A program made the translations under genes and the position numbers. Positions 3,841-61,815 of a DNA stretch of 64,000 nt are shown here, piece after piece. The notes under the pieces were generated by a model that was not told the origin of the DNA, searched no databases, and saw only the letters and a list, made by a program, of their open reading frames with translations. Within the stretch, counting starts at the first letter, position 1, and each line of letters opens with the position of its first letter. This DNA comes from Laetmonice hystrix (taxonomy: Eukaryota). The stretch covers positions 19,034,001 through 19,098,000 of the forward strand of contig OZ249436.1 of assembly GCA_965235115.1 (NCBI GenBank), in the 5' to 3' direction.

Positions 3841-4034
3841 GTATCTGCTCCACACGTTGGTCGTGAGCACTTGGTTCTTCTCGTCAAGGTCGAGGATTTG
3901 AATGAGAGCGAGGCCATAACTGACCCGCACTGTCTCGGAGGTATTATACACCGGCCGTCCCACGATTCCTACTCGCTCGTAGTTCTCTAACAAATGCTTG
4001 ATCAACCGCTTCTCGTCGGACATGGCGATACCAT
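3841..4034 (-). CDS. Internal exon of a nicotinic acetylcholine receptor (Cys-loop ligand-gated ion channel) subunit, start of the mature extracellular domain
   Basis: Translates as (D)GIAMSDEKRLIKHLLENYERVGIVGRPVYNTSETVRVSYGLALIQILDLDEKNQVLTTNVWSRY, with the nAChR hallmarks E-x-RL-x-x-x-L, RPV, L-x-QI-x-D-x-DEKNQ-x-LTTN-x-W. Acceptor ttacag|AT at 4035/4034 (phase 1, as expected after a signal-peptide exon); donor TAC|gtgagt at 3841/3840 (phase 0, the conserved intron position after TTNxWxxx). Length 194 = 2 + 64 codons. Confidence 0.95.
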
Positions 4035-4036
4035 CT

Positions 4037-4556
4037 GTAACGGTACAGGACACACATGACTGATACGTCTCGCTTAACGGAACAGGACATACATTACTGA
4101 TACGTCTCGCTTAACGGAACAGGAAACACATTACTGATACATCACGCTTAACGGAACAGGACACACACTACTGATACGTCTCGCTTAACGGAACAGGAAA
4201 CACACTACTGATACGTCTCGCTTAACGGAACAGGAAACACATTACTGATACGTCTCGCTAAACGGTACAGGACATACATTACTGATACGTCTCGCTTAAC
4301 GGAACAGGACACACATTACTGATACGTCCCGCTTAACGGTACAGGAGGACACACATTACTGATACGTCTCGCTTAACGGAACAGGAAACACATTACTGAT
4401 GCGTCTCGCTAAACGGTACAGGACACACATTACTGATACGTCTCGCTTAACGGAACAGGAAACACATTACTGATGCGTCTCGCTTAACGGAACAGGAAAC
4501 ACATTACTGATGCGTCTCGCTTAACGGAACAGGACACACATGACGATACGTCTCGC
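4037..4556. repeat. Minisatellite, 37-bp unit x ~14, abutting the nAChR splice acceptor
   Basis: Unit aacaggaaacacattactgatacgtctcgcttaacgg. Confidence 0.95.
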
Positions 4557-7500
4557 CTCAACACATTGACCGTGATACTTACAGAGATAGGAATAGAATC
4601 AATGTAAGATATCACGTAACTACGTCAGCCTTTACTATAAACCAATACCCTCATGTTTCAATTTGACGTTGGAGCAGCATGTAATGTGACAATTGTATCT
4701 CACTGGCTCTCAAAGTAAGACGCCCTCCACCAGTTCTACTCGATCGTCCAAATCACCCTTCCATAGCATGCTCAAACCATGGGCCCACTTTAGCGAGGAT
4801 TATTCTCACAGAATGGTCAAAGCATGGGTCCACTTTACCGAGGATTATCCGATGAAAACCCCGGCCTCTACTTGAGGCAGTTCTTGACCTTCTTGTGAAT
4901 CACACACATATATAAGCGGTTGTCACGAAGTCATTCGATAGATCTATCAACCCAGACACACCAAAACCTACCCATAACCACGAGACGGCCGCATCAACCG
5001 GCTCATGAGATCTTTGATATCTATTTTAACGTCAACTCTATTTTAGTACCTCTAATTGCTGTAGATTGAACCACCAGTAGAACCTATAGAAATCCTCTCC
5101 GATGCAAACAAAGCTATTTTATTTTCTCTAGTGTAGATTTCAACCAGCCGAACACTCGGTATTTTATAGCCTGTCTGATGAAACTACTGCCTGATCTTAG
5201 AAATGTTAGTAAACCCATGTAGCCGTTGTATCAGATCCTGTTCGTTAAAATTCCAATGAAATGCGTTGGAATTTTAATGAATGAAAAGTCGCTACCGCTT
5301 TTGATATTTGTGGAAAATTAAGACTAACTTCATTACTTCCTGTTTCAGTCTCAATCTGCCTCCCTCTGTGTGTCTCCTACCAGAGCTATGTGACAACTTA
5401 CCAATATTCATCAGTATTGTGCAAAGTAACATCTTATAAATAACAGCCATCAGGATCAATTGGCCTCTCCATAGCAACACTGCAACTTATGGCACACGGA
5501 ATCCACTGTAGTACATGGCAGTACACTGTAGTACACTGTAGTAGAACGTAAATCCAGCCAGACAAGGCATTGAATGCGGTTGTGGCTGGCTCTGTTAGAG
5601 AATCACCAAAAAAACGGAGAGTGAGTGCTGACAATGTCTATAACAACGGAACGTTGAAGTAATCCTTTCTAAACGTTCAGCTCAAAGTTCACAACAGTCT
5701 GGGGCGAGTGGGTGATCAATCGTACTGTGTCCCAGGCACGTAATCCACACCGTCATTTGGCTCCAACAAACACCGCCATGAGAAAACTTAATTATCGCTA
5801 AGTAATAAATTCGTCCAATAATTATTGTCCAATCTGAGTACCGTGTAGAGGGTGAGTCAGGAGGAGAAGGGGTGGAGAGGGGTGGGGTGGGCCAGTTCAC
5901 CCCTTGGTAGGGTACCGAGGGTGAGAAGGATGGAGGGCGAGGACTGCGAATGACCGAAACATTCTACAATTTTAGTCACAGAACTAAATTCTCTTAAAAG
6001 TGAATACATGTCCAGATAAAATACAAATCTTCCGCAGATAAACTTCGGGACAACTGGCATTTTCCTGGACTTCGTGGACACACACATTTCTCCGTATTGA
6101 GATTGACAAATCATTAGTGTACTGTACAGTGTATAATTATAATTCTACAGACTGCCCAGTCATGACGTACTTCAGTAGTTGAGAGCCGTAGATATATGTA
6201 CATTATTTGGATGAAGTCTGACACGCGTCACTACCAGCCTTGTACACCCCCAGTGTAAGGGAATGGGCTGGTCGGATTAAACTCCCCCGAGATGTTGCGG
6301 GGAGGGCAGGGTAACCCATGGTAACGAGCCCCTGTCAATCACTCCAGTCTGGAAACCGAAATGGAAAGTAAATCATATCTGTCCAGATAAGTAATGAACT
6401 CGCCATGGCGCTTGGCGCCTGACCGGGAGGTGGGCCCAACCCCCCAACCCCCCTACAGGGACCATCCCCGACACGTGGGTTGGACGGGGGCCCGGGAACA
6501 CAGAGTCAAGTGGCCACGTGGGGAACACACGTGGGGTACACACGCGGGGCCCGACTCCCTACCACCAGGGGTCAGCCCTATGGCGGTCAGCGTCCGTGAC
6601 CTTGGACTGAATGAATAATAGACACCAACCACAGAGACCTACGTGATTATACGGGGGGGGGGGGGGGGTAGTACTGCATATTAATATAATAATAATATGT
6701 GGTAAGAGTTAATTTGGGACGTCGATCTCTCTACATCACGTGGGACGTTACTGGAGCCTCACTATGACAGGATTGAATCACGTGACTTGTTTGGTTATAC
6801 GTAATAAGGGGACGTTAAGGAGATTGAATCTGAGAGCGAGGCTGAGCGGTGAATGGTTCACTAGTTCAACTACTGGCCACGGTTACTGGGGAGAGATTCA
6901 CTAACTTGGCAGCCGCAAACACACACACACATTGCACAGCCAAACCGCCTTTTGTTTACCTAGAATACCAGGTGTTACACATCGACATGTATAATAGGTA
7001 CCCGACAATGTTTATATTACTGCCTCAGCCACCACGTCATCGCTTCACAACGTAATTTCAGAGACAGATGCTCTGCAGGATTCGCATCCGCTGCCTTTAC
7101 CCAAAGGGAGAAAAAAAGGCGCGCCGACGTTGTAAGACGAATGGTGCTAGTGTTCGCAGACATACTTTAGAAGTAATTACAAACGTTAGACGTCATATCT
7201 GACATGAAACCCTCATGATATAGTGACAGTGACATTCACAATAAGCTTCGTTCCCTGAAAACAAAAATCAAAGACCGTACCTACCCAAACGGGCCTCATA
7301 AAAGAAAAAGAAAAGAAAAAAATACATGACTTTCCTTTCGGCAAGATTGGAGTTAATAACAAGCTCCATTTATTCTGAGATAAAACAAGTTAATTTATCA
7401 AATCCAGTATGGCATTCATCCAAAATTCTGGATGAGAAGAAGAAAGGTCACAATGATTGACTTTTTAAATGTGAATTTTGACCATAATGACGTCATTATA

Positions 7501-7909
7501 GACGGAAAGTGCTTCCAGCAGTAATCAGAGAGAGTACACAGTTATAACAGGGTCGGGTTATAATAAAAGCCTTGATAAGAACCGTATGCGGTAGAGGTTG
7601 GTGGAAAGACTGTTTACGATTACAGCCTGCTCGATTGTCATGAAGTTTTTAAGTTATACAGAAATACATTTCTCTCTCAGGCCTCACACAACGTTCTCGT
7701 ACTTGACTTTGACATTCACTTGTATCATTAGGACCTCACTCCGCCAACAGAAATGTTTTGAAAGATGTTATGTGGTCTCGGGTTACGGGAACGTTTGATA
7801 AAATGGTTCAAGATGTTGATTGGATGGAATCGATGCCTGCCCCCTGTCTGAGGGTCGAAGGGTATGCCCTATGGTAGGGCCTGGCCTAGGGTTAATGATA
7901 AGTTTCTAT

Positions 7910-8582
7910 GGAGGTCTGAGGATGTAGACGTTAGGAGTGGAGGTCTGGGGATGTAGACGTTAGGAGTGGAGGTCTGGGGATGTAGACGTTAGGAGTGGAG
8001 GTCTGGGGATGTAGACGTTAGGAGTGGTGGTCTGGGGATGGAGACGTTAGGAGTGGAGGTCTGGGGATGTAGACGTTAGGAGTGGTGGTCTGAGGATGGA
8101 GACGTTAGGAGTGGAGGTCTGGGGATGTAGACGTTAGGAGTGGAGGTCTGGGGATGTAGACGTTAGGAGTGGTGGTCTGGGGATGGAGACGTTAGGAGTG
8201 GTGGTCTGGGGATGTCTAGACGTTAGGAGTGGTGGTCTGGGGATGTAGACGTTAGGAGTGGAGGTCTGGGGATGTAGACGTTAGGAGTGGAGGTCTGGGG
8301 ATGTAGACGTTAGGAGTGGAGGTCTGGAGATGGAGACGTTAGGAGTGGAGGTTTGGGGATGTAGACGTTAGGAGTGGAGGTTTGGGAATGGAGACGTTAG
8401 GAGTGGTGGTCTGGGGATGTAGACGTTAGGAGTGGCGGTCTGGGGATGAAGACGTTAGGAGTGGAGGTCTGGGGATGGAGACGTTAGGAGTGGTGGTCTG
8501 GGGATGTAGACGTTAGGAGTGGTGGTCTGGGGACGTAGACGTTAGGAGTGGAGGTCTGGGGATCGAAACGTTAGGAGTGGTG
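7910..8582. repeat. Minisatellite, 29-bp unit x ~23
   Basis: Unit ggaggtctggggatgtagacgttaggagt. Confidence 0.95.
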
Positions 8583-10018
8583 ATAGATTAGTGTCGTCCT
8601 TTACCACCAGAGTTGGTGGAGGTTTACCATACAGATCTGGTCGAGTCGAGCCGATCAGTATGTGACCATGAATACCTGACCGTCTGACCACCCCACTCCA
8701 CCCCCTGCCAGTCCCCTACTATCCTACCCACTTCATTCCAGCACCCCACCATCCTCAAGCCCACCCTATCCTACTCCCCAGGCAGGACCCACGCTGACAC
8801 GGAGCCTCGGTCTAAGGTCTTATATCAAGATATCCGGATTGTGCACTTTATCTCTGAGCCCCGGGATCAAAGGTCAGACTAAGATTATCACAGAACCAAA
8901 CAAACTCCTCCACCGACCCCTGTTGGAGCCAGGAGCTAACAAGCCTCGTTTGAAGCGTCTCCATGGTAACCAAGAAAACCCGTAAACGAATTGTTATCCC
9001 CTGATTGCATACACGGTCGGTACCAGATGAAATCGCTGCTTCATGCCATGATTCATGGATATACGAATCAACAGTTTGACAACTGGACCTACTGAACCAT
9101 GACAGCACACCAACCCGTCCCGAAATACACCGCCTTCTTTGTCAGCACCGGATGTAGATCTACACAAGATCCATAGAAAGCAGGTCATTTTGCGAGTAGA
9201 ACTTTGTCGAGTGCGCTCCAATTGTTGAATAAGTAATGTAGTATTACAGTCACATGCCAATGTCTGGTTTTCGATCCACGATCCTGGGATTCACGACCGA
9301 AGTTGTATGCGAAGCGGAAGTCCCACGTGATAGTGGTCTGTACATACCCGGATGGACCCAATGCGTACAATGTGCCGTCATGCGCGCACTAACAGGACGG
9401 GGGTAACACGGGTGATTTATAACGGCCATGATTGGATGTCGGAATGGTCCCGATGCATTGTGGGTACCGCGGATGAGCGTACACCTATAACCCCGATAGA
9501 GGGCGCTGTTAGTAAGTCGGGATCGCAAGCTGCTCGTAAACTCCGGTCTTTTACATTCACAAGCCCTCCATACCTTAAAGATGGGATTACTCGGCGGCCT
9601 TCACGATAATCCTTCACCTTTTCCACGCGGGTAATTGGAAGGGAGTTCATGGCGTCTGGCCAAACCAATTAACGCCATCTAACGGTGAATTATGAGGACA
9701 GCTTACATGATTATGGGAATGGATGCACGGACGCGGGATGGCCAGGAGAAGGTAACATGGAGGGGGACGCGCTCTCACCTGTGTGAGGAACGTTGACCTC
9801 AGTGACCTCGTCACGACCCGTGATTCATTGACAACCAGAACATGCATGCACGCGGCGATAACATGTCCCGCCATGCACCGCGGGTGACAGTCGTGATTCG
9901 GTTTCATGGTTAGTAACCTAGAAACCTCTGATGGGAGATCGTCTCCTGTCTGTCATGGAGTCGTCTGCTTGACAGTGAAAAATCCTGTGACGTCACCAAG
10001 TGACCGAACCATTCAGAA

Positions 10019-10296
10019 CCGGTGCAACAGGTTCAAGTTACCCCCCCCCCTCCCCATTCAACATACCGCGGTCACCTGAACCTCGGTTCAAATTAACCCC
10101 CTCCAGTTCCAAATGACAAAATAACCCACCCTAACCCTAACCGTCACCCTAAACCTTTTTATTGAGTTATTTTGTCATTTGAAACTGGAGGGGGTCATTT
10201 GAACCCAGGAGGAGGCAATTCGAACCTATAGGTTCAGATGACTAGGGGTATGTTGAATGGGGGGGGGGGGGGGTTACATCAAACCTGATACACCGG
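10019..10296. mobile_element. Palindromic foldback element with central CCCTAA motifs
   Basis: CCGGTG...CACCGG ends; inverted arms (ccccattcaacatac / gtatgttgaatgggg; ccccctccagttccaaatgacaaaataac / gttattttgtcatttgaaactggaggggg); centre accctaaccctaaccgtcaccctaaacc. No clear TSD. Confidence 0.7.
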
Positions 10297-10735
10297 CGTC
10301 CGTAAACGCCACTAGCGGTCGCTTGACTACACCAGTATGTCAGGAGGAGAAGTAACACCTATTCTACATTGATACACACATCATTTTCAGCTTCTTATAC
10401 CTTAGAAAAGGGAGCCTCTGAGATCGATATGCAAGGAATGCCAACACGTTGCACGTTGTATAGTTATTCAACTCGTCTGAAGGGTAGGGGGCCGAGGCTT
10501 ACCGTGTGAACGTTATAGTGAGATCAATTATCGCAGCCACCACCTTATGCAAGGTCCAAGTAAAAGAAATGACATAACCCAGTCGGTACGACCTATTCCA
10601 ATGTAGAAACAGGCGTCATGGCATGTATGGCCTGCTGGGAAACAGTTAATGGGTACAGGCGTCAGACAGGGCCAGTGGGTGGGTTGGAGGCCAGACAGGA
10701 AGCTCGAGTAGCTTACCGAATGGAATCAACCAGTA

Positions 10736-10923
10736 TTACACGTAAACTCAGATATCTAGGAGTATCAACCTGAGATCGTTACACGTAAACTCAGATATCT
10801 AGCAGTTTCAACCCGAGATTATTACACGTAAACACAGATCTAGAAGTATCAACCCGAGATCGTTACACGTAAACTCAAATATCTAGGAGTATCAACCCGA
10901 GTATTGTTACACGTAAACTCAAT
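10736..10923. repeat. Imperfect minisatellite, ~43-bp unit x ~4.5
   Basis: Unit ttacacgtaaactcagatatctaggagtatcaacccgagatcg. Confidence 0.85.
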
Positions 10924-12507
10924 TTAACCCGGGTATGACAAACTCTAAAATGTTTCTCGATGACGTAACAGGCGTGACTGTCTTTACGTCACTCAAGATT
11001 CTATTTTGTGTTTTGTTGAGCAAAGTTTTGGGGCAGAACCAGAGATTGATGTGATCCTTGTAATCTACGAGCTGTTTGTTGGTTGTCAGGTAAAGCACAA
11101 GGTCGTTCTCCGTACCTGGCGGGGAGTAGGCTCACAGAGATTGAACATTCAGGGACACCGCGTCTGCTCCCACCCCTGCGCATGCGTACACCTGCGCCGT
11201 CCGTCCACGTGCCAGCCGACTACATTAGTACCGGGGTCTGTCGGGGGCGGCGCTGCTGTCGGCATGACGTCCAACCCGGGTCACAGGGTACAAAAATCGA
11301 TCACGTGACTTCTTGAAGAGACAGTGCCGGAAGGAAGACACGTATGACAGCGTTCCGCCAGCTTTCCACCGGGGCCGAGTGCACGTCAGGTAAGAACAGT
11401 CGGTGCCATACGTCTGGGTCTTTCATTATACAGCACCTGGTCCTTGTATTATTGACACAGACCCGCGCTTTACGATGTGTCCATTCCACGACACAGAGTC
11501 GAGCCCCTTACAAAACGCCTTATATCGATCTCGGGACTGGCTAAGGTATATTTGAGCGATTTACTTCGCCTTTGATTCGAGTAATATCTGATGTCGTATT
11601 GAATAAAGTCTTAGAATAGAAACAATTTTGCCTGCAGAATTTGTCTTGAGAATCTGCCATTTCTTGACTATCAATTGAAAGTAGTAATTCCAACATGCCA
11701 ACGGGCAGTCCACCCCGATCAGAACTATTGTTGGTCATTTTGTTCTATTTTTCTCAAGACGTTTCAGAAAAAAACCCATATTTCACTATTACTCTGGGTC
11801 TGAATTGAGAGAGTACACAAGTCCTGATTCAACCCAGTCAATCTACGTGTGCCAGCCACAGAGGTTGTCTGTGAGTTGTTTATAACCTGATATTTGGGAA
11901 CTCAAACTGAAATAATGTGTTTGAAATATTAAACCGGCCAGTATCCAGTCCTGACCCCGGACTCCCCCCTGGTGGTTAGGCAGAGAGTTACGGCTAGCGG
12001 TTCGCACTCAGTGATTGTTGTCAATCACAGCACACTTGGTAACGAAGGCTGTATCCCAGGTTGTCGCTGGATTTTGGCGGGAACTGAGTTCCCCGTTTTA
12101 CATACTCTTACATGCCTTTAAAAAAAGCAAGTTGATATATTGATACGCCCGTACCGGTGTTACGGAAAGGAAGAGCGGGTTGGGGGGGGGGGGGGGGGGG
12201 AGAAACTCCGCAACCAGCCCAGAAGTTGTAGTATTGTTTAAAATTGTTTTAAATATTGTCTAACTGGTTATGACATGCGATCAGTCCCAATTTGCCTTTG
12301 GCACATTAGTAATTCCCTCTCAAATTATTAATACTCCACGGTCCAAGTAGTAATTACACGTTGTCTCGGAGGCTTATCTGACGCTGCGCTGTTTTATAAA
12401 CTAGCAAATTCTGTTTTAACTTTTATGTACTACGGAATCGATTGAGTTAAGGCCTAAAACAAAGTCAGGATTTGGCCCGCGGAGTCGGCCTCTCGATGAA
12501 GTATTAA

Positions 12508-13045
12508 AGGGAGTCGTAAAATTCATTTTTTCGATTTATGGCAGTCTTAGAAACATAATATGATTCGCATACCTTAGACTCCCAGTAACATCATGTGAGA
12601 CTGTTATGGCCCAGCGACCAGTATTTAGTAAGGAAAATATGCCAAATCTCTCGCAAATACGTAGCTCAGAATTAGCGAGCGGCCCACAGGATATTTGAGT
12701 TGGCCGCGGTCGGGCCATGATGATGCGTGATCACGTGACTTCCGGGTGTGGAAGGGAATCAAGGGAATCTCCCTCTAGTCTAGCATTGACCTAAATACCG
12801 CATGTACACCCGGAAGTCACGTGATCACGCGTCATCATCGCCCGACCGCGGCCAACTCAAATATCCTGTGGGCCGCTCGCTAATTCTGAGCTACGTATTT
12901 GCGAGAGATTTGGCATATTTTCCTTACTAAATACTGGTCGCTGGGCCATAACAGTCTCACATGATGTTACTGGGAGTCCAAGGTATGCGAATCATATGTT
13001 TCTAAGACTGCCATAAATCGAAAAAAATGAATTTTACGACTCCCT
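12508..13045. mobile_element. Kolobok-type foldback MITE (538 bp) with TTAA target-site duplication
   Basis: TTAA at 12504-12507 and 13046-13049 flank AGGGAGTCG...CGACTCCCT termini; arms 12508-12749 and 12806-13045 are near-perfect inverted copies (a few substitutions and small indels) around a ~56-bp spacer. TTAA TSD with RR...YY (AGG) ends fits Kolobok rather than piggyBac (CCY ends). Confidence 0.85.
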
Positions 13046-16403: not shown

Positions 16404-16417
16404 GCGCCACCTAGCGG
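16404..16417 (-). promoter_or_regulatory. CTCF-like consensus motif in a CpG-rich patch
   Basis: Reverse complement CCGCTAGGTGGCGC. Confidence 0.45.
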
Positions 16418-50367: not shown

Positions 50368-50590
50368 GGCCCCCGGGCCCCGGTCCTCGACCCCCGGCCC
50401 CCGGCCCCCGGCCCCCGGCCCCCGCCCCCCGGCTCCTGCATGGCCCCCGGTCCCCGGTCCCCAGCCCTGGTCCCCGGCCCCGGTCCCCAGCCCCGACCCC
50501 CGACCCCAGGTCCCCCGGCCCCGACCCCGGTCCCGGTCCCCGGCCCCCGGCCCCCGGTCCTCGGCCCCCGGTCCTCGGCCCCCGGCCCAC
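50368..50590. repeat. GC-rich 6-7-mer repeat (CCCCGGY) next to the gap
   Basis: ccccggcccccggcccccggc...ccccggtccccggt; GGGGCC-like on the minus strand. Confidence 0.9.
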
Positions 50591-51007
50591 CTAACCCACA
50601 TCCTGCCACCACACATCCTCCCATGCTCGGGGTTGAACCGCTTCGAGCGATTCCCTCACGATAGCCAGCCTTTTTTCAATGGAGAAAAGATCGCAGCGCC
50701 ATCTGCTTACGACCTAATAATTCTCCTTGCGGCCTTGCAGTACCGCAAGCACCAATCAGATTGCTCACATTCAGGCACACCAATCCAACCAGCACGGCCA
50801 TTGTTTAGAAACCAACCTCCCGTGTCACTGACACTTCAGTTGATACTATATACAGTGTTTGTCCTAGAAACGAGGCCCTCCTCGTATCCAAACGTGTGCG
50901 GAACGACTTGACTTGTGATAAACCAGGATTGTTTTAATCAAGTTACCACACACCTACACGGACTTCAATCAGCCATAGCTTTGAGTGAGCAGGGATCGAT
51001 GGAAGAC

Positions 51008-51080
51008 CTCCCCGCCCGCCCGGCCCCGTCCTCCCGCCCGGTCCCGTCCTCCCGCCCGGTCACCTCCTCCCGCACGGCCG
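51008..51080. repeat. 18-bp unit x ~3-4
   Basis: cccgcccggtcccgtcct. Confidence 0.8.
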
Positions 51081-51098
51081 GTATAAGGTAATGTAAGT

Positions 51099-52630
51099 AA
51101 TACCGTCCGCAATGCTCACATTGACTCGCCCAGCGCTAGCGTACGTACCACATCACTAATACCGTCCGCAATGCTCACATTGACTCGCCCACCGCTAGCG
51201 TACGTACCACATCACTAATACCGCCCGCAATGCTCACATTGACTCGCCCACCGCTAGCGTACGTACCACATCACTAATACCGTCCGCAATGCTCACATTG
51301 ACTCGCCCACCGCTAGCGTACGTACCACATCACTAATACCGTCCGCAATGCTCACATTGACTCGCCCACCGCTAGCGTACGTACCACATCACTAATACCG
51401 TCCGCAATGCTCACATTGACTCGCCCACCGCTAGCGTACGTACCACATCACTAATACCGTCCGCAATGCTCACATTGACTCGCCCACCGCTAGCGTACGT
51501 ACCACATCACTAATACCGTCCGCAATGCTCACATTGACTCGCCCACCGGTAGCGTACGTACCACATCACTAATACCGTCCGCAATGCTCACATTGACTCG
51601 CCCACCGCTATATACGTACCACATCACTAATACCGTCCGCAATGCTCACATTGACTCGCCCACCGCTAGCGTACGTACCACATCACTAATACCGTCCGCA
51701 ATGCTCACATTGACTCGCCCACCGCTAGTGTACGTACCACATCACTAATACCGCCCGCAATGCTCACATTGACTCGCCCACCGCTAGCGTACGTACCACA
51801 TCACTAATACCGTCCGCAATGCTCACATTGACTCGCCCACCGCTAGCGTACGTACCACATCACTAATACCGTCCGCAATGCTCACATTGACTCGCCCACC
51901 GCTAGCGTACGTACCACATCACTAATACCGTCCGCAATGCTCACATTGACTCGCCCAGCGCTAGCGTACGTACCACATCACTAATACCGTCCGCAATGCT
52001 CACATTGACTCGCCCAGCGCTAGCGTACGTACCACATCACTAATACCGCCCGCAATGCTCACATTGACTCGCCCACCGCTAGCGTACGTACCACATCACT
52101 AATACCGCCTGCAATGCTCACATTGACTCGCCCACCGCTAGCGAACTACGTACCACATCACTAATACCGTCCGCAATGCTCACATTGACTCGCCCACCGC
52201 TAGCGTACGTACCACATCACTAATACCGTCCGCAATGCTCACATTGACTCGCCCACCGCTAGCGTACGTACCACATCACTAATACCGTCCGCAATGCTCA
52301 CATTGACTCGCCCACCGCTAGCGTACGTACCACATCACTAATACCGTCCGCAATGCTCACATTGACTCGCCCACCGCTAGCGTACGTACCACATCACTAA
52401 TACCGTCCGCAATGCTCACATTGACTCGCCCACCGCTAGCGTACGTACCACATCACTAATACCGTCCGCAATGCTCACATTGACTCGCCCACCGCTAGCG
52501 TACGTACCACATCACTAATACCGTCCGCAATGCTCACATTGACTCGCCCACCGCTAGTGTACGTACCACATCACTAATACCGTCCGCAATGCTCACATTG
52601 ACTCGCCCACCGCTAGCGTACGTACCACAT
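51099..52630. repeat. Highly homogeneous satellite, 59-bp unit x26
   Basis: Unit aataccgtccgcaatgctcacattgactcgcccaccgctagcgtacgtaccacatcact. Confidence 0.95.
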
Positions 52631-52677
52631 GACTGAGGATAGGTTGCTTCCTGCCGAAACCTTGTGACGGTCGTGAT
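52628..52677 (+). ncRNA. Degenerate type I hammerhead-ribozyme-like motif (Penelope-like terminal repeat relic?)
   Basis: CTGAGGA (52633-39), AGG ttgctt CCT stem, GAAA (52656-59), CC ttgtgac GG stem III, GTC triplet (52670-72), then GTGAT. Stems I and II are imperfect. Confidence 0.3.
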
Positions 52678-52938
52678 AACTCAGACCTGACACTCGGATT
52701 TCATTACTACTGTCACTAAACCTTGTTACATCACTCTACGAGACGACACGACCACCAAACCTGGCTAATTCCATAACACAAATAGAAATTATGCTGCAGT
52801 CAATTCGATTGTCCATGCCATCAGGAAGATTAAAGCTACGAGACGATAGGAGAACGCCACCGAAGGATGACCTTGAGATGACCTACAAGTGATTGAAAAA
52901 TCATTGGACGCAAGCCGAGCCATTCTGAGACACGAACT

Positions 52939-53507
52939 GTTGTGACGCTGAGACGGACCGATTGGTTATCACGCAGGGACCGGAGCCGTTGTGACGGACC
53001 GAGCTGGTGTCACGCAGGGACTCGAGCCGTTGTGACGGACCGAGCCGGTGTCACGCAGGGACTCGAGCCGTTGTGACGGACCGAGCGGTTGTCACGCAGG
53101 GACTCGAGCCGTTGTGATGGACCGAGCGGTTGTCACGCAGGGACCGGAGCCGTTGTGATGGACCGAGCGGTTGTCACACAGGGACTCGAGCCGTTGTGAC
53201 GGACCGATCGGTTGTCACGCAGGGATGCGACCCGTTGTGACGGACCGAGCGGTTGTCACACAGGGACGCAAGCCGTTGTGACGGACCGAGCGGTTGTCAC
53301 GCAGGGACTCGAGCCGTTGTGACGGACCGAGCGGTTGTCACACAGGGATGCGACCCGTTGTGACGGACCGAGCGGTTGTCACACAGGGACGCAAGCCGTT
53401 GTGACGGACTGAGCGGTTGTCACGCAGGGATGCGAGCCGTTGTGACGGACCGATCGGTTGTCACACAGGGACTCGAGCCGTTGTGACGGACCGAGCGGTT
53501 GTCACGG
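52939..53507. repeat. Minisatellite, 41-bp self-complementary unit x ~14
   Basis: Unit gagccgttgtgacggaccgagcggttgtcacgcagggactc. Confidence 0.95.
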
Positions 53508-53924
53508 CCTGAAGTCGAGCCTCTCTATCTCCTGGGTCACATGGTATGAGCAGTTGGCGCCAGGGTAAATGGAAGCCGACAGGTGGCGCTCTGACTCATG
53601 AATGTATAACGACCCAGACAGCTTTTAGCCGTCAACGTTCCTATTGGGTATTGGAAGAAGTGTGAGACGTCCACACGTTCTCCCCGCTCGTCCACACGGA
53701 TACACAGATTCCCTTTCTAAAACCCCCGCAGGATAGCTACGGCTTTTACGTGTAATTGTCCTGTTCTCCTGCTTCGGGCCTCTGGTACATACTGGGTGAT
53801 TCGACCAGAAACCTCTTACTGGAGAAAGCCACACACTGGAGAAGACGACCTCTGACTGTCTTCAGCTTGGGGGCGTGAGAAGATCATCTTCTATCTGCTT
53901 GGAAAACGAGAAAGGCGGCACAGC

Positions 53925-54345
53925 CCTTGTCTTGAGCACAAACCCTTGTCTACAGCACAACCCCTTGTCTACAGCACCACCCCTTGTCTACAGCACCACC
54001 CCTTGTCTACAGCACAAACCCTTGTCTACAGCACAACCCCTTGTCTACAGCACCACCCCTTGTCTACAGCACCACCCCTTGTCTACAGCACAAACCCTTG
54101 TCTACAGCACAACCCCTTGTCTACAGCACAAACGCTTGTCTACAGCACCACCCCTTGTCTACAGCACCACCCCTTGTCTACAGCACAAACCCTTGTCTAC
54201 AGCACCACCCCTTGTCTACAGCACAACCCCTTGTCTACAGCACAACCCCTTGTCTACAGCACCACCCCTTGTCTACAGCACCACCCCTTGTCTACAGAAC
54301 GACTCCTTGTCTATAGCATCCCTTATTTACAGCACAACGACAGAA
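53925..54345. repeat. Minisatellite, 21-bp unit x ~18-20
   Basis: Unit cccttgtctacagcac(aaa/aac/cac)c. Confidence 0.95.
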
Positions 54346-54778
54346 CGACCTTTGCGTACGATAAAATACAGCTAGGTTTTAGGCCGGTTACTGCAATCTA
54401 AGCGAAAGGCACGGTTAGATTTTAATTTATGTTATAACAACCTAATTATTATTGATTCCCCACACAGCTGTGGGACTGGCCTTTTCCTCCCTTGGCTTGT
54501 TATTTACCGTATACTTCTTCAACCTCTTCCTTGGCACTTCTTTATCAGCGGTCTGATTTCCTAACCAGAGAGTTTGAACTTATTAATCCTGTACAAGTGT
54601 GGGAGGATAGAAAATTAGTGCTGATCAGTAAATACTCTATGATTCACGTCTGTGCACATTTCGTATGCCATGTGAATGCTACAGAGAATATGTGGGCGAT
54701 TTTAATTAGACTGACTCTGTGCCAGATCGCAACAAGTTGTTCTGTTCCCTGTACGTACAGTGTTTTCCACACGATCAG

Positions 54779-54795
54779 AAAGAGAGAGAGAGAGG

Positions 54796-54866
<71 letters not shown>
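54779..54866. repeat. (GA)n microsatellite
   Basis: About 40 GA units with one interruption. Confidence 0.95.
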
Positions 54867-54868
<2 letters not shown>

Positions 54869-55324
54869 GCCTGTCCCCGGTAGATATATAATATAGGATC
54901 TACGCCTGCATTCAGAACTGTTTGTAGCGTCTAACGTTCATTGACGGGTTAGAATTAGGAGGTATAACAAAACTTTTAGTTCCAGCATCCCCTGCCGTGG
55001 AGGGTGGGCGGCACCGGATTGGCCATCTCCATTGACAACACACCGTTCGTACTCAGCCAATCAGCCTTACGAGACCGGTTATAATACAGCTTCTTACGTA
55101 AGTCCCTGCAGATTCGGCCCCTTCTGAAAGCCGATTGTCTCAGAACTACACTCCCCGTCTCACGTCTGGGCTTCTCAGCTCTTCTCTTAGGCGAGGAGCA
55201 CTGCAGAAACAATCGACAGTACGATCTGCTCTGGAGAATATTTACGGATTATGTTTCTGGAGTGGGCTATAAATAAACAAGATGGAAACCTTGTCGATCA
55301 ATGCCTGACTGCATGTAGCTCACG

Positions 55325-55398
55325 TCACGTGCAGTCTGTCGTCTTGGCTCAAAAAATGGCTCCGCGCTGGGACAAAGAGGAACGCTCTAACCGGAAGT
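55325..55398. promoter_or_regulatory. Promoter-like motif cluster
   Basis: TCACGTG, AAAATGGCT (YY1-like) and CCGGAAGT (ETS). Confidence 0.3.
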
Positions 55399-55846
55399 TG
55401 TTCTCTATCAGTTCTATCAGTTTAATTTCAAATTTAATGCAAGTTATCCGAAGAGTTTTAACTGCAACGTATCTTTCAAACGGAAATGGGCTATCGTTGT
55501 GTTGCTAAACGTTTGTAAGCAGTTTTCTAGGAAACTCCCAACAGGCGTTATGATTCCTTGACCCTCTGAGGCCAAATGAGCATAAGCACCGTCACTCGCT
55601 TTTAGGAAAACAGGTTTTCAAGGCATAGCATCTAGCTGGATGGAGTTTGGGTGAGACGGTTTATCTCCCTGTCCACGAACAGGTGCGGTCAGGTACAGTA
55701 CTACATCCGTGAACTCTTACTGGATTGTTTTACAGGATTGTATTACGTACTACCACGCAATGATTTGACCTTGTCTACCGTTTCGTTGACCTCGCTGACC
55801 TTGTATACATCCCCTAAGGCCGGGTGGTTATTGACCTCGAGCCTCG

Positions 55847-55860
55847 CCACCAGAGGGCAG
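55847..55860 (+). promoter_or_regulatory. CTCF consensus motif
   Basis: CCACCAGAGGGCAG matches CCASYAGRKGGCRS; motif match only. Confidence 0.5.
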
Positions 55861-57175
55861 TGTAGACATGAGCAGGGAGCGGCACACAATGAAAGTTGGA
55901 GGACAATAAGTGAGGGGGGTTTCCCCCTGATTACAGAGACCTGTCGTCTCAAACAGACGTATCCCGCTCTCCGTGCTGGGGAAATAGACCCGCAGAAAAT
56001 CTACCATGCGAGGAGAGAGAAAAAAGTACGAATGTACACGGTAAAGGATCCGTATATGCGTGGTGTCGGGCCGTCGTGAATTTAGAAAGGGTTATTGATA
56101 ATAAGTATTGAACCGCTAGGTTTCCAATATATGGCCTTGGCTAGTCGCGGATTGTCGGGGGGGGGGGGGGGGGGGGGCTGCCGCGCCGCTGGACGCCACG
56201 CCCGGACACCACGTCCAATCGGACGCCATTATCAGTGTCACGCATGCGCCGTGGGTGCCGGTTGGTGAGGCCGACGCTGACGTTGTCGTGATGAGGCCGG
56301 CGCACACACCGCGACCGTGTCGTCAACCTCTACCCCGTTCATAATTCGCGAGGATACGACAGTGGCGGGCCTGTTGAAAGGCTGCCACCCCCCCTGTTGG
56401 GTGGGCAGGCGCCGGGCGAGGTCTCCCTCCATCGCAGGATGTCCAGACATATTATCCTTCCTAACCAGGGCGTGGAGATAAGAGCCAGAGATCGGGGTGT
56501 CAGAAACCGGGCCGTTTGGTTAATGCCGAATTGTGATGAGGGAAATCCCCAGTAGGCGGCGTCCCAAGGGCGTTAAGAGTGAGACACAATGATTGAACGC
56601 GCCCCCCCCCCCCCGCGTCACGTCACGTGACCCTCTTACCACATCGAGGCCGATATCTGAGATCGTGCCACCGCCTTTTTACGTCGCCGAAACAACGGGA
56701 AGTTATCGTCATAAAAATCCGCATAAAAACCAAATAAAAATCGCCCGACTAAATCAGGTCACCTTAACTGAAATAGATAACAGGAAACTGAGGGTAAAAC
56801 ATGCTTCAGTGAGAATAGCGGGAGGATGAGAGCATTATCTTGTGGTTATAGATAGGCCATGGCGGAGGTTGACTTCACTCGGACAACCTTGTAGCCGGCA
56901 GACCCCTATCCAAGACGGAAGTTGTATAATATGCCATTGATCATGCGCAATGATGAGCCAAATCGAGGCAGCCATCTTATCGGCTCTGATTTATGTCGAC
57001 AATGAAGCCACATTAGTATCAGAAGCCACATTAGTATCAGACAGAGAGGTCCCATGGGGGCGAAGCCATAATTGGGGTCACGAAGGGCGGTCTGATATTT
57101 TAGTTCTAATGCGCGGCAGTTGAAAGGCCAGCACCGCCAGCATCTGTATAACGTTTAAATGAATCAGTACTGGGG

Positions 57176-57347
57176 GAGGGGTGAGGAGGTGGAGGTAGGG
57201 GTGGAGGTGGGGTGGGGGTGCGGGTGGGGGGGGTGGAGGTGGGTGGTGGGGGGTGTGGGTGTGGGTGTGGGGGGTGTGGGTGTGGGGGGTGTGGGTGGGT
57301 GTGTGGGCGGGTGTGTGTGGGTGGGGGGGTGGGGGTGGGGGTGGAGG
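57176..57347 (+). repeat. G/GT-rich low-complexity tract (G-quadruplex potential)
   Basis: ggggtggaggtggggtgggggtgcgggtggggggg... Confidence 0.85.
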
Positions 57348-58987
57348 GACCTCATCGCCTGAATAACTAGACATATCGAATTTATTACCTTTGATAACTA
57401 CGTTTTTCTCCGACACTCCGACACCGTATTTCTTGAGGAAAGCAGGGGCAGTACTTTAATAAAAACATTCTTGTTTGGCGAACTCTCAATGCAAAGAAGC
57501 GTTACGGATGACCTGTAATCGCCAAATGCTGGTCCGTTGGACCTGCATTCCTATATCATTATATTAATATATCGTGCCAATCCTCTAAACGTTATAAATG
57601 ATCTCCTTAATTATAACGGCTTGTGTCACGATTAGGGGGGGGGGGGCGGGGCGGGGCGAAGGACCGGCTTACCTAGGGAATCCTGGTCCGGCGGACCTGC
57701 ATGCTGCCAGACTTCTCTCTAAAGATTCCCTTCACACCCCCCCCCCCCCCCGCATCCCGCCCCTCCCCTGGAGGTGAGGGTTTAGAACACACCCACAGGC
57801 AGTCTGCCAACTTGCCGATAACTGGGTGCGAATTATTGTCATGCCTAAAAGGTTAGGTAAGGTGGTAGGACACAACAACACGAAACGTTCATCTCACCGT
57901 GCAGTGACCCGTAAGTTTTCATGGCTGGATCCAGACGTCTCTACTTGGCCCCTGCATGTCCACCCCCCCTTATGGTGTCTTTTCCCCCAAATTCTCGATC
58001 CACCTGTTATTGAACGGCCTGCTTTGAAGGGGCGTTTAAACGATGTCCTTAGGGCATTTTAGTTTCAGCTCTAAAATATGTGTGAATGTGTTTATTGGAG
58101 GCGTGGAGGCGAGGTGTGGGTGCATGGTACGTGGGGGTCGTTGTAGTTGTTGTAGGCCGCGCACTATTACTAACGCAGGTTGTCTACCTGTCCAAACATC
58201 AGTCATATACGAGCGTACATGGTGGTGCAGAGAATTCAAAAACGATTTCCAATAAGCTAGCATGTCTCAAGAGCAATTATAAGATCCTCCAAACCCAACA
58301 CAGCAATAACAGTCTTGAGTTGCCCGGCCGAAGCTTAATGTGTTCGTGACAAATACGTGTATGATATTGATCGACAAAGCATCTAGGCCCAGTATGATTA
58401 CAAGTCAAGAAACCGGCTCCAGCCCCAACGAGGTGATAAATATAGAGATCGCTCAGACATAGTTTCAATTCCTACTTCAAATTATCTCAAACTATGGCGT
58501 TTCTTCACGCTAATCTTGTCTTCATCTGGTTTTTATTGTAGGTTTAAAAATAACCATCGAGGTCACGTGTCGTCAGGCCGCTAAGTGACGCATTCGTGTT
58601 GACGTTCGGGTACTGACGCCCATGCGCAAACGGCTCACGGGAAGTTGTGAGAAAACTGATTTCCGGTAATCTTGTCCCAGGAAGTCCAAGCACTTCCTGA
58701 CGCGGTCGGCTGACTTGTGGCTTGCTTCCATACACAATTTTCTACCCCGAGCCAAGATATGTTTGAAGGGGGTTCGACAACAGAATTCCCCTGCCTTCCT
58801 CTTCTAGACATATACAGTGTTCCTGCACTAGTTAGGCCAACCACACTGTAAAAGATCGCGATGTTATTCCGCCTAAAGTAGGTGACTTTTCCACATGAGA
58901 AGCTATGGAAGCCAATCAGAGAATTATTCTACTCCAAGTAATCCTCGTTTCATCATAACATTTTATTTAGGACTGATCCTAACCAAG

Positions 58988-59140
58988 NNNNNNNNNNNNN
59001 NNNNNNNNNNNNNNNNNNNNNNNNNNNNNNNNNNNNNNNNNNNNNNNNNNNNNNNNNNNNNNNNNNNNNNNNNNNNNNNNNNNNNNNNNNNNNNNNNNNN
59101 NNNNNNNNNNNNNNNNNNNNNNNNNNNNNNNNNNNNNNNA
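58988..59140. other. Assembly gap (153 N)
   Basis: Run of N. Confidence 1.
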
Positions 59141-59812
59141 ATTGCAGTGGCGGTGAGGAATCATAGTACCTCCAGGAAATGCCTAGGAATGTGAACCTTT
59201 ACTTTAGACGGAGGTCGATATCGTCGGAATTAATTCTGTAGAAGTGTTGTGGACACTGCCACCCGCCGATACAAAACCACCATATCTCTGTGAAGTAGCC
59301 AGTGAGAAACCTAATCGATGACATTGGAATGACTTACTGGTGTGAAGGGCTAGTGTAAATAGAGGTCTCTCTGACACACCATGGTGATGTGACTGTAACT
59401 CGATGAATGCTGTGAATGGTCGAATGTTGACAATACGCTGTCTATTATTAATGGGTGTAATGTGGCTTATCAACGGTATAGGAAACGGGCGGACGGGAGC
59501 AATACGGATCTCAATCAGGCCTAATTCCGGGCCTTTCAATAACGAATGAGGATATTTCTTGTCACCACGAATGATATCAATTAGCAGTCTAGGTTATGGG
59601 ACAAAACCTGAAAGCCCAAAATCAACATTTGACCGAATTCCTATCTTGTCAGCATGACAGCCAGCATGCATGACACGGCGTGGTCGTACAGACGAGTGTG
59701 ACGATATGATGGCCCTCACTGACAGGGGGCGGTATGGTCGACAGGATCGGGCCACGCATGCTCCCGTGAAATGTGAATCAAGAACACGCTCCGTTATTTT
59801 TCTGAGGTAATA

Positions 59813-60071
59813 CGGTGTCCCAAAAGTACACCACGGATCGGCTAAAACACTAACATCTCATCTCGGTTAACACAAATTCTCGGCTCGGGCTAGCGAAAAA
59901 CGCGAAAAGCTCGGTTCGACTAGCGCACACCTAAGGGTTAGGGCTAGTTAGGGTTAGGTGAGTTGAGGTTTTGAGTTACAAAGTAGGTAATCGAGCTGAG
60001 AATTCACGTTTGTCGCTCGCCGAGCCGAAGTTTTGTGTTTTAGCCGAGCCATGATGTACTTTGGACCACCG
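59813..60071. mobile_element. TA-flanked palindromic MITE (Tc1/mariner-like ends) with central telomere-like TTAGGG motifs
   Basis: TA|CGGTGTCCCAAAAGTACAC... and ...GTACTTTGGACCACCG|TA; imperfect inverted arms (tcggctaaaacac / gtgttttagccga); centre ctaagggttagggctagttagggttagg. Confidence 0.7.
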
Positions 60072-60477
60072 TAGTGGTAAACGCCTGTGCCCCCGTCCCA
60101 TGCCCCTGATGGACACGAAAGGACGAGACACACGGGACCAATCGCAGCGCTTCACGTGGTTCAAATACACGTGGTTAGTGGTTGCGAATGACACTCACTG
60201 ACTGCCACTAAATCTGAACGATACAAGATCTAAAAACGAGCTACACTGGCCTGCTTGGTTTCAGGGCGAGGTGACTGATTGCTAACGCTCGCCTCACATC
60301 CAAGCTGCATAAGGAGATAATCCAGGGTTTGGAAACAACCAATGAACTGTATCACTGAGAAATCTAAATCGTGGTTAACGCCTGAGGTGGTCTTACCACA
60401 GAGTACCCTACACCTGTGGTCTTACCAAGGAAAGTATCCGTCTAATGAGGAGACGCTGTGCGGTGGGTACTCGGCTG

Positions 60478-60955
60478 GACGACCTGCTTACTGACGGCTA
60501 GCGGGATGACCTGCTTACTGACGGCTAGCGGGATGACCTGCTTACTGACGGTAGGCGGGATGACCTACTTACTGTCGGTAGGCGGGATGACCTGCTTACT
60601 GACGACAGGCGGGATGACCTGCTAACTGGCAGCGGGCGGGATGACCTGCTAACTGACGGCAGGCGGGATGACCTGCTAACTGGCAGCGGGCGGGATGACC
60701 TGCTAACTGACGGCAGGCGGGATGACCTGCTAACTGGCAGCGGGCGGGATGACCTGCTAACTGACGGCAGGCGGGATGACCTGCTAACTGACGGCAGGCG
60801 GGATGACCTGCTAACTGGCAGCGGGCGGGATGACCTGCTAACTGACGACAGGCGTTATGACCTGCTAACTGACGGCTAGCGGGATGACCTGCTAACTGAC
60901 GGCAGGCGTTATGAACTGCTAACTGACGGCAGGCGTCATGGCCTGCTTACTGACG
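60478..60955. repeat. Minisatellite, 27-bp unit x ~17 with two alternating variants
   Basis: ggcgggatgacctgctaact(gacggca/ggcagcg). Confidence 0.95.
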
Positions 60956-61037
60956 GGATATAACGTGTACTGTACGTACATCTGATGTTGTCGTCCAGAC
61001 ACACACTGCCCGCACATACACAAATGGAGGTTTCCCA

Positions 61038-61330
61038 TTGGTTAATTTGCCGGCCAGCCGGCACGAGGCAGCTCGACCCACGGGAATCTCGCCTCCCGCG
61101 AGATGTCCTTGGTGCCATGGCCAATCAACCTGCTGGCCTGGCGCCTGCTATCACGCTAATACTGAACACTGCCTTCAATCCCCGCTCTCCCGCCCCCGGC
61201 CACGTGTACGGGCTTCTGTCACAGCAAAGGAAATCTGGAACAAGCACTGTCCCGGAATAAGGCGTCCCATAATGACCGAGAATACGGGATGCTCAAAGGA
61301 CCTTTACGGGACGCCGCTTGCACTGTGAAA
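61038..61330 (+). pseudogene. Decayed non-LTR retrotransposon (CR1/L2-like) reverse-transcriptase-region fragment
   Basis: Across frameshifts reads LVNLPASRHEAARPTGISP / PRDVLGAMANQPAGLAPAITLILNTAF / KEIWNKHCPGIRRPIMTENTGCSK. This is collinear with the typical LINE ORF2 motif order KAAGPDGISPRxL...LAPxLTLIFNxS...KKGxKxxPxNYRPISLTSVxSK (recalled from memory, not aligned). Confidence 0.5.
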
Positions 61331-61369
61331 ATCAGCTTCAGCGACGGCAGTCTACAGATAAATGAGATT

Positions 61370-61482
61370 GGGAGAGGTGGAGGAGCTGGAGGAGGAGGAG
61401 GAGGAGGAGGAGGGGTAGGAGGAGGAGGGGAGTGGGAGAAGGGGATAAGGAGGAGGAAAGGGAGGTGGAGGAGGAGGAGGTG
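61370..61482. repeat. GGA-rich microsatellite
   Basis: ggaggaggaggaggaggagg... Confidence 0.9.
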
Positions 61483-61746
61483 TTAATTTGTTGTCTAGAG
61501 GCGCTGGCTTTATGAGCTTAACGACCATACCATGGATTCCTCCTAAAGCGTCTCATTCTTGGCACATAATCCTTTACTGCCCTTTTGCCTCACAATGGTT
61601 AGCAAACCCACTTCTGACGTCAGCAAGATGGACAATGGAGAACACTGTCCCAGAGTCTAACGTATCCAGAAACCAGACCCGAACATAAAGCAAGCCTGTT
61701 GGAAGGAGGCAGATCCTGAACGAGTAGAGTAAAAATGGTCACTTAC

Positions 61747-61815
61747 AGAACATCGTTCCACGAATGTACAACAAGGGAGCTCACTTACCTGAAACAAAGA
61801 AAATCATCATTAAGG
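61747..61815 (-). promoter_or_regulatory. Candidate recursive splice site (ratchet point) with 42-nt cryptic exon
   Basis: Minus strand: ccTTAATgatgattttctttgtttcAG|GTAAGTgagctcc...gatgttct|GTAAGT. AG at 61790-61789, first donor 61788-61783, second donor 61746-61741; branch-like A at about -22; no other AG for about 45 nt upstream. Confidence 0.6.

What the first reader, a model, noticed from the sequence alone, without database searches (positions are those of the whole stretch)
4034..61815. Candidate recursive-splicing system stepping through a giant nAChR intron
Seen: the two best pyrimidine-tract + AG|GTRAGT sites I found by eye (61788, 34670) are both on the nAChR sense strand. Each has a branch-point match at about -22/-23, an AG-free zone and a partner GTRAGT donor 23-52 nt downstream. 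I saw no equally strong site on the antisense strand. They lie 27,118 nt apart, and the second is 30,636 nt from the coding exon acceptor. Established: Drosophila ratchet points and vertebrate RS-sites are a 3' splice site fused to a 5' splice site, defined through a short cryptic exon with its own downstream donor, and are enriched in very long introns of neuronal genes. Inference: this intron is removed in ~30 kb steps. I am not aware of recursive splicing being characterised in a lophotrochozoan, but I cannot check the literature.
Basis: partly seen in the sequence, partly recalled or inferred. Interest (0 to 1): 0.8.

Follow-up and report, generated by a model that had tools for sequence, protein, structure and literature searches.

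The report
Candidate recursive splice sites, nAChR intron
Two acceptor-plus-donor sites cut the 89-kb first intron of a nicotinic receptor gene into three roughly 30-kb pieces, and a distant relative has two matching sites, so stepwise (recursive) intron removal is likely here, although no RNA intermediate has been seen.

Summary
On the minus (gene) strand, cag|GTAAGT at 61788 and cag|GTGAGT at 34670 are the two best composite AG|GT sites among 752 on both strands of the intron.

New evidence:
- An RNA contig from run X4 joins exon 2 (3841-4034) directly to a signal-peptide exon 1 at window-equivalent 93481-93571. Intron 1 is therefore 89,446 nt and holds both sites in sense orientation.
- The sites cut the intron into 31.7, 27.1 and 30.6 kb (P about 0.008 for such evenness).
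- Each site opens a short out-of-frame cryptic exon closed by a second donor.
- A relative species has unalignable introns. Its orthologous intron still has two outlier sense-strand sites, 35,251 and 70,571 nt upstream of exon 2.
- Genome-wide, TTTCAG|GTRAGT occurs 378 times against 155 for the reversed control. The matches cluster on the same strand and often carry a downstream donor.

Not shown: no junction, lariat or saw-tooth evidence. The only RNA run holds nothing at site 61788.

Verdict: probable Drosophila- and vertebrate-style recursive splice sites with cryptic RS-exons, in an animal that is probably a spiralian. This is a new member of a known kind.

The scan's first readers noted similar unchecked series elsewhere in this genome.

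The parts
3841..4034 (-). nAChR exon 2 (194 nt). It has a phase-1 acceptor (AG at 4036-4035), a donor GTGAGT starting at 3840, and encodes the start of the mature ligand-binding domain.
   Evidence: RNA contig X4 record 25 lies on 3935-4035 and runs on into exon 1.
4035..64000 (-). The part of intron 1 inside the window. The whole intron runs from window-equivalent 93480 down to 4035, 89,446 nt nominal. Exon 1 lies outside the window at L004:9481-9571 (93481-93571): ATG, signal peptide, then donor CAGG|GTAAGA.
   Evidence: The long ORFs inside are all tandem-repeat artefacts with no Pfam family at or above its curated cutoff (one weak sub-threshold DUF7217 match).
61789..61815 (-). Site A acceptor half: branch-point-like TTAAT (A at -22), pyrimidine tract, TT at -5/-6, and CAG.
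61747..61788 (-). Site A regenerated donor GTAAGT, which is also the start of a 42-nt cryptic RS-exon. If included, it gives a stop at the third codon.
61741..61746 (-). Donor GTAAGT that closes RS-exon A.
34671..34700 (-). Site B acceptor half: CTTAT (A at -23), pyrimidine tract, TT at -5/-6, and CAG.
34619..34670 (-). Site B regenerated donor GTGAGT and cryptic RS-exon, either 23 nt (to 34648) or 52 nt (to 34619). Both forms shift the frame and lead to early stops.
34613..34647 (-). The two alternative donors that close RS-exon B: GTGAGT at 34647-34642 and CAG|GTGAGG at 34618-34613.
50224..50367 (.). Assembly gap inside segment 2. Its right flank is a (GGCCCCC)n simple repeat.
   Evidence: Continuity was not tested.
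58988..59139 (.). Assembly gap inside segment 2.
   Evidence: Continuity was not tested.

Best explanation
The two sites are recursive splice sites (ratchet points) of the RS-exon type in the 89.4-kb first intron of a nicotinic acetylcholine receptor subunit gene. Proposed course, inferred: as transcription proceeds, the strong acceptor at 61789 and the donor 42 nt downstream define a cryptic exon. Exon 1 (ending ...GACAGG) is spliced to it, which removes 31.7 kb and creates a new donor AGG|GTAAGT. That donor outcompetes the cryptic exon's own donor and is spliced to the acceptor at 34671, removing 27.1 kb. This recreates AGG|GTGAGT, which is finally spliced to exon 2 at 4034, removing 30.6 kb. 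The cryptic exons never reach the mRNA. If they did, they would introduce stop codons. Shown: the anatomy of the sites, their place inside the real intron, the direct exon 1-exon 2 junction in RNA, the even spacing, and the matching sites in a relative. Inferred: that the steps actually occur.
For: 1. Site anatomy and outlier scores.
2. RNA contig X4 record 25 joins exon 2 to a sequence found at L004:9482-9511. That locus encodes ATG plus a signal peptide and ends in a phase-1 donor. So both sites lie in intron 1 in sense orientation, and the mature junction skips the cryptic exons.
3. The segments are 31,692, 27,118 and 30,636 nt, with the sites at 35% and 66% of the intron. P about 0.008 for two random points. 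In flies, the first site of two-site introns sits about 33% from the 5' end, and recursive introns are enriched among first introns and introns over 40 kb (PMC6110457).
4. Both sites have TT at -5/-6, as do 99.5% of fly ratchet points (10.1101/006163).
5. The cryptic exons are 42 and 23/52 nt and carry stops or frameshifts. This matches the roughly 50-nt, out-of-frame, poorly conserved fly RS-exons (PMC8605326).
6. A relative species (exon 2 protein identical, exons about 82% identical in DNA, introns unalignable) was scanned over 83.9 kb upstream of exon 2. Two outliers among 627 AG|GT sites (scores 17.7 and 16.2, next best 9.5) are both on the sense strand, 70,571 and 35,251 nt upstream of exon 2. 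The nearer site is within 0.05% of the midpoint (P about 0.001). Each has TT at -5/-6, a downstream donor and an in-frame stop.
7. Genome-wide, TTTCAG|GTRAGT has 378 matches against 155 for the reversed control. By a hand tally, adjacent pairs within 50 kb are about 25 on the same strand and 3 on opposite strands, against about 5 each expected. Of 72 non-repeated sampled sites, 30 have a strong acceptor context, and 43% of those have a good donor at +20 to +90, against 3-13% in control windows.
Against: There is no direct RNA evidence of recursion. The only RNA data are assembled contigs of one run, with depth 3 on this gene, and that run holds none of the sampled words at site 61788. The motif used for the genome-wide counts was chosen after seeing the sites. 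The composite pattern without a pyrimidine tract is not enriched (1979 against 2533 for the control) because minisatellites dominate it. The splice scores use generic weights, not species-trained ones. In the relative, exon 1 was not reached, so it is not proven that both of its sites lie in the same intron, and the cryptic exon bodies show no sequence homology. Segment 2 contains two gaps of estimated size. The donor closing RS-exon A has the same intronic hexamer as the regenerated donor, so the competition argument rests on the exonic bases only.
Confidence: 0.7

Rival explanations
1. The sites are ordinary cryptic or regulated poison cassette exons (42 nt and 23/52 nt). They would be occasionally included to trigger nonsense-mediated decay, and the GTRAGT at their 5' ends would never be used as a donor.
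For: Each has a good acceptor and a good downstream donor, and inclusion gives premature stops. The two models share this anatomy.
Against: A poison exon does not need a consensus donor as its first six bases (chance about 2/4096 per site). Yet all four sites in the two species have GTAAGT or GTGAGT exactly there, while the rest of the exon is not conserved. Even spacing is not expected for poison exons. The one RNA contig shows no inclusion.
Confidence: 0.13
2. The sites are chance occurrences of splice-like motifs in a long, repeat-rich intron and have no function.
For: About two AGGTRAGT octamers per strand are expected by chance in 64 kb, and three plus one are seen. The motif and statistics were partly chosen after the fact. 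Some genomic copies of the motif are transposon copies, minisatellite units or ordinary exon starts.
Against: Both sites are single copy. They are joint outliers on the sense strand only. The spacing is even (P about 0.008). Second donors lie within 23-52 nt. The same pattern appears independently in a relative with unalignable introns.
Confidence: 0.07
3. The sites take part in some other multi-step removal, such as nested or intra-splicing of internal intron segments or exon-definition anchors that improve accuracy, without the strict exon 1 to site A to site B to exon 2 order.
For: Several strong donors lie close together at each site (three at site B), which would allow other pairings. The order of events cannot be read from DNA.
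Against: No specific feature favours this over the simple ratchet. The regenerated donors AGG|GTAAGT and AGG|GTGAGT are good.
Confidence: 0.1

Closest known systems
Drosophila intronic ratchet points with cryptic RS-exons (Ubx, kuz, luna, Bx; Hatton 1998, Burnette 2005, Duff 2015, Joseph 2018, Pai 2018)
   Same: Both have a juxtaposed strong acceptor and consensus donor around AG|GT, and TT at -5/-6. Both have a short, out-of-frame, poorly conserved cryptic exon of about 50 nt closed by a second donor. Both occur in a long first intron of a neuronal gene, with sites placed at about one third and two thirds of the intron. The cryptic exon is absent from the mRNA.
   Different: The segments are about 30-35 kb, against a fly mean of about 9-18 kb, although within the fly range of 2.6-63.6 kb. 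The host is a different, probably spiralian, animal. Conservation is seen only as position and motif in a distant relative, not as an alignable ultraconserved block. There is no RNA proof.
Vertebrate recursive splice sites defined through RS-exons (Sibley 2015; Blazquez 2018, PMC6224609)
   Same: Both use RS-exon definition, competition between the regenerated donor and the RS-exon donor, poison consequences of inclusion, and very long introns of neuronal genes.
   Different: Only a handful of fully suppressed intronic sites are established in vertebrates. Here the genome-wide motif excess suggests a fly-like abundance, with on the order of 140 strong sites for the narrow motif alone (an extrapolation).
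Poison cassette exons coupled to nonsense-mediated decay
   Same: A short exon with a premature stop lies inside a coding-region intron.
   Different: Poison exons do not need a consensus donor at their first base and are not expected to be evenly spaced.

Membership tests
Recursive splice site / ratchet point | A 3' splice site (branch point, pyrimidine tract, YAG) fused directly to a consensus 5' splice site (GTRAGT) | tested here: met
   Top two of 752 AG|GT sites in the intron.
Recursive splice site / ratchet point | Lies in sense orientation inside a long intron of an expressed gene | tested here: met
   The RNA contig joins exon 1 (window-equivalent 93481) to exon 2 (4034). The intron is 89,446 nt.
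Recursive splice site / ratchet point | TT at positions -5 and -6 (99.5% of fly ratchet points) | tested here: met
   Both sites, and both sites of the relative. The criterion comes from 10.1101/006163.
Recursive splice site / ratchet point | A downstream donor defines a short cryptic RS-exon (about 50 nt) that is out of frame or carries a stop | tested here: met
   Exons of 42 nt, and 23 or 52 nt. All inclusion products have early stops. The criterion comes from PMC8605326.
Recursive splice site / ratchet point | The regenerated donor is at least as strong as the RS-exon donor | tested here: inconclusive
   AGG|GTAAGT against TCT|GTAAGT, and AGG|GTGAGT against TTG|GTGAGT and CAG|GTGAGG. I compared them by consensus only, with no species-trained model.
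Recursive splice site / ratchet point | The cryptic exon is absent from mature mRNA | tested here: inconclusive
   A single 188-nt contig at depth 3 joins exon 1 directly to exon 2. Contigs drop rare isoforms.
Recursive splice site / ratchet point | The site is conserved in evolution | tested here: inconclusive
   The relative species has two sense-strand outlier sites at 35,251 and 70,571 nt upstream of the orthologous exon 2. The flanks are not alignable and its exon 1 was not reached.
Recursive splice site / ratchet point | Sites are placed so that they divide the intron evenly | tested here: met
   The sites sit at 35.4% and 65.7% of the intron. Compare PMC6110457.
Recursive splice site / ratchet point | RNA intermediates: upstream-exon-to-site junction reads, segment lariats, saw-tooth coverage | not testable with these tools
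   Only one RNA run was served, and it exists as contigs.

The most novel reading that the evidence does not exclude
Recursive splicing through cryptic RS-exons is a genome-wide, selectively maintained system in this probably spiralian animal. Well over a hundred sites would act as a ruler that cuts long introns into equal pieces of about 30-35 kb. Their positions would be kept in related species while the surrounding sequence turns over completely. That would place the mechanism at or before the common ancestor of flies, spiralians and vertebrates.
Probability: 0.45. Interest if true: 0.75.

Novelty: new member of a known kind. Interest (0 to 1): 0.62.

Why it matters
In the papers I searched, recursive splicing is described mainly in Drosophila and vertebrates. 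Four full-text searches pairing the term with mollusc, lophotrochozoan, annelid or cephalopod words found no relevant paper. A clear, testable case in a third major animal branch would show that the RS-exon mechanism is ancient. The same layout in a relative and a genome-wide motif signal strengthen that case. It would also give a second invertebrate system in which to ask why long neuronal introns are cut into even pieces. The exact junction sequences to look for are now known.

Tried and rejected
**Exon 1 by homology.** The N-terminus of P0001, a spliced relative from a JGI metatranscriptome, gave no hit in 264 kb or in the whole genome (best E 0.53). Exon 1 was found through the RNA contig instead.

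**Composite pattern without a pyrimidine tract.** YAGGTRAGT-N15-45-GTRAGT is not enriched (1979 against 2533 for the control) and is swamped by minisatellites. I do not use it as support.

**Taxon identification.** The protein atlas gave no usable phylum. The notes of other readers name no taxon. Cluster names give only flatworm and octopus relatives at about 57-62% identity.

**Sequencing-run search at site 61788.** Only the three DNA runs of the source sample hold it, each with 0.55 of the words. No RNA run and no relative holds it.

**Exon-1-like match in the relative.** A match 31.5 kb upstream of its exon 2 (WFSVWLLCIKLQ, E about 0.07) has no in-frame ATG after a stop, and its only ATG gives the wrong phase. 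I rejected it as exon 1.

**Coding content of the intron.** All ORFs of 150 aa or more are tandem-repeat artefacts, and none matches a Pfam family at or above its curated cutoff (one weak sub-threshold DUF7217 match).

**Repeat origin of the two sites.** Rejected. Both are single copy.
Full report
**The observation**

The nAChR gene runs on the minus strand. Reading that strand shows the following:
- tttctttgtttcag|GTAAGTGA, with the G of GT at 61788 and a second GTAAGT 42 nt downstream.
- tgtttgtttcatttcag|GTGAGTAT at 34670, with GTGAGT at +23 and CAG|GTGAGG at +52.

A census of the window finds only four AGGTRAGT octamers, three on the minus strand and one on the plus strand. The two named sites are the only ones with a strong pyrimidine tract (14 and 15 of 20) and a long AG-free zone (45 and 58 nt).

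The coding exon is 3841-4034. It has a phase-1 acceptor and matches nAChR N-termini in the PDB at E 1.7e-12. Both sites are single copy in the 627-Mb assembly.

Both N gaps lie between the two sites, so 27,118 nt is a nominal length. I did not test continuity across the gaps. They are intronic, so no reading frame depends on them.

**Where the intron really begins**

Homology searches for the signal-peptide exon failed. Three of the runs are genomic.

The fourth, X4 (58 Mb of contigs, same sample), gives a 188-nt contig that lies on 3935-4035 and then runs on for 87 letters unlike the window. The first 30 of those letters match L004:9482-9511 exactly. That is window-equivalent 93482-93511.

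The minus strand there reads ATG, a hydrophobic signal peptide (MSYHGGLCVWLSVWLATVCYQG...) and a phase-1 donor CAGG|GTAAGA. Joined to exon 2, it gives an open frame.

It follows that:
- X4 is RNA.
- Exon 1 ends at window-equivalent 93481.
- Intron 1 is 89,446 nt.
- Both sites lie inside it in sense orientation.
- The one mature junction observed skips the cryptic exons.

**How unusual the sites are**

I scored every AG|GT on both strands with a simple generic acceptor-plus-donor log-odds score.
- In intron 1 there are 377 sense and 375 antisense sites, with mean -9.1 and SD 5.7.
- The two sites score 11.2 and 10.7.
- The next best is 7.1, antisense and inside a tandem repeat. The next sense site is 3.6.

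The sites divide the intron into 31,692, 27,118 and 30,636 nt, at 35.4% and 65.7% of its length. Two random points leave a smallest segment this large with P about 0.008.

In flies, recursive sites favour first introns and introns over 40 kb. The first site of two-site introns sits about 33% of the way along (PMC6110457).

Both sites have TT at -5/-6, as do 99.5% of fly ratchet points (10.1101/006163).

If either cryptic exon (42 nt, or 23 or 52 nt) were included, a premature stop would follow. Fly RS-exons are likewise about 50 nt, out of frame and poorly conserved (PMC8605326).

**A relative species**

The representative-protein search found P0002, which is identical to exon 2 over 61 residues. 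It is encoded on a 5.45-Mb contig of ENA assembly ERZ25767047.

Only exons align to our locus: exon 2 at 81.6% and exon 4 at 82.1%. The downstream paralog aligns at 70.7%, so this is the ortholog in a well-diverged relative.

I walked upstream by hopping from one called ORF to the next and assembled 83.9 kb upstream of its exon 2. Apart from one weak 71-nt match, nothing there aligns to our intron.

Among 627 AG|GT sites on both strands (mean -7.9, SD 5.6), two stand out, and both are on the sense strand:
- Score 17.7, at 70,571 nt upstream of exon 2.
- Score 16.2, at 35,251 nt upstream of exon 2.
- The next best scores 9.5 and is antisense.

The nearer site lies within 0.05% of the midpoint between the farther site and exon 2 (P about 0.001). 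Each has TT at -5/-6, a branch-point-like motif, a downstream donor at about +47 or +56, and an in-frame stop in phase 1.

The cryptic exon bodies are not homologous to ours. This is conservation of layout, not of sequence. Its exon 1 was not reached, so the third segment is unknown. An exon-1-like match 31.5 kb upstream was rejected.

**The genome as a whole**

- The 12-mer shared by both sites, TTTCAG|GTRAGT, has 378 matches against 155 for the reversed control.
- From the position lists (26 matches were not listed and tandem arrays were collapsed), I tallied adjacent pairs by hand. Within 50 kb there are about 25 pairs on the same strand and 3 on opposite strands, where uniform placement predicts about 5 of each. 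Within 150 kb there are about 38 against 12.
- I fetched 80 of these sites and added our two.
  - Ten belong to a repeat family, a duplicated aldehyde-dehydrogenase exon or a short shared match.
  - Of the 72 others, 30 have at least 14 of 20 pyrimidines and an AG-free zone of at least 25 nt. My rough expectation is 3 to 4.
  - 43% of those 30 have a good donor at +20 to +90, against 3-13% in three control windows.
  - Seven of the eleven same-strand pairs on contigs C1-C3 are pairs of strong, non-homologous sites.
- One test gave no support. The composite pattern without a pyrimidine tract is not enriched, because minisatellites dominate it.
- First readers of this scan noted many similar series in other windows of this genome. 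Those notes are unchecked and are not independent evidence.

**What is not shown**

No junction read, lariat or saw-tooth coverage was obtained. Run X4 holds none of the sampled words at 61700-61860, and no other RNA run or relative's run was served.

The splice scores use generic weights. Part of the statistics was designed after seeing the sites.

The organism is coded. The nearest named full-length relatives of the protein are from flatworms and Octopus, so a spiralian origin is plausible but not proven.

**Verdict**

The most likely reading (about 0.7) is that these are genuine recursive splice sites of the RS-exon type, removing the intron in three steps of about 30 kb.

The rivals are:
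- Poison cassette exons without recursion. The consensus donor at the first base of all four sites argues against this.
- Some other multi-step order of removal.
- Chance.

The mechanism is known from flies and vertebrates, so this is a new member of a known kind. Four full-text searches found no report of it in molluscs, annelids, cephalopods or lophotrochozoans generally.

Noticed in passing
L007, genome C1:19017252-19018029 (window-equivalent -16748 to -15971), minus strand: A minisatellite (units of about 36 and 58 nt) carries 18 copies of a strong composite site, cccccttatag|GTAAGTTA. It is on the sense strand and lies inside an intron of the downstream nAChR exon set. Other first-reader notes describe similar tandem arrays of ratchet-like sites elsewhere in this genome.
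   Followed up: partly
L015, L007, L016 (window-equivalent -1790 to -7919 and -14079 to -20874), minus strand: Exons 3 to last of this nAChR gene lie just below the window. A second, about 70-80% similar set of nAChR exons (from the exon 3 equivalent onward) follows 6 kb further on. It could be a tandem paralog lacking obvious 5' exons of its own, or an alternative 3' exon set.
   Followed up: no
L020:1691 (genome C1:19189691, window-equivalent 155691), minus strand: This is the highest-scoring composite site in the 264 kb examined: ctctttgcag|GTAAGTGT, with CAG|GTGAGT 50 nt downstream. It lies 62 kb upstream of exon 1 on the same strand. It is not shown to belong to this transcript. No coding ORFs were seen between it and exon 1.
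   Followed up: partly
window 4038-4556: A 37-nt tandem repeat (14 copies) starts 4 nt upstream of exon 2, so the branch point and pyrimidine region of the exon 2 acceptor lie in the first repeat unit. That acceptor looks much weaker than those of the two candidate sites.
   Followed up: no
whole window (for example 7909-8580, 32101-34391, 51098-52634): The intron is packed with minisatellites: 41 Tandem Repeats Finder rows with periods of 7-291 nt. All ORFs of 150 aa or more are translations of these arrays.
   Followed up: partly
L025, L057, L062, L089, L095, L100: An interspersed repeat family (74-88% identical copies) carries ...gataagttttcag|GTAAGTACTGG with a poor pyrimidine tract. It accounts for about 7% of the genomic TTTCAG|GTRAGT matches sampled.
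   Followed up: partly
L034 and L035 (C1:15934598 and C1:15962319): These are 97% identical tandem duplicates in which a real coding exon, aldehyde-dehydrogenase-like by eye, begins with GTGAGT right after its acceptor. It is an expressed-exon type of composite site.
   Followed up: no
window 1-6000: The genomic contigs of the source sample differ from the assembly at about 84 positions plus several indels in 6 kb, or about 1.4%. This implies high heterozygosity. Only 0.55 of the sampled words at 61700-61860 are held by the DNA runs.
   Followed up: no
window 59930-59958, plus strand: A short degenerate TTAGGG-like run (ctaagggttagggctagttagggttag) lies inside the intron.
   Followed up: no
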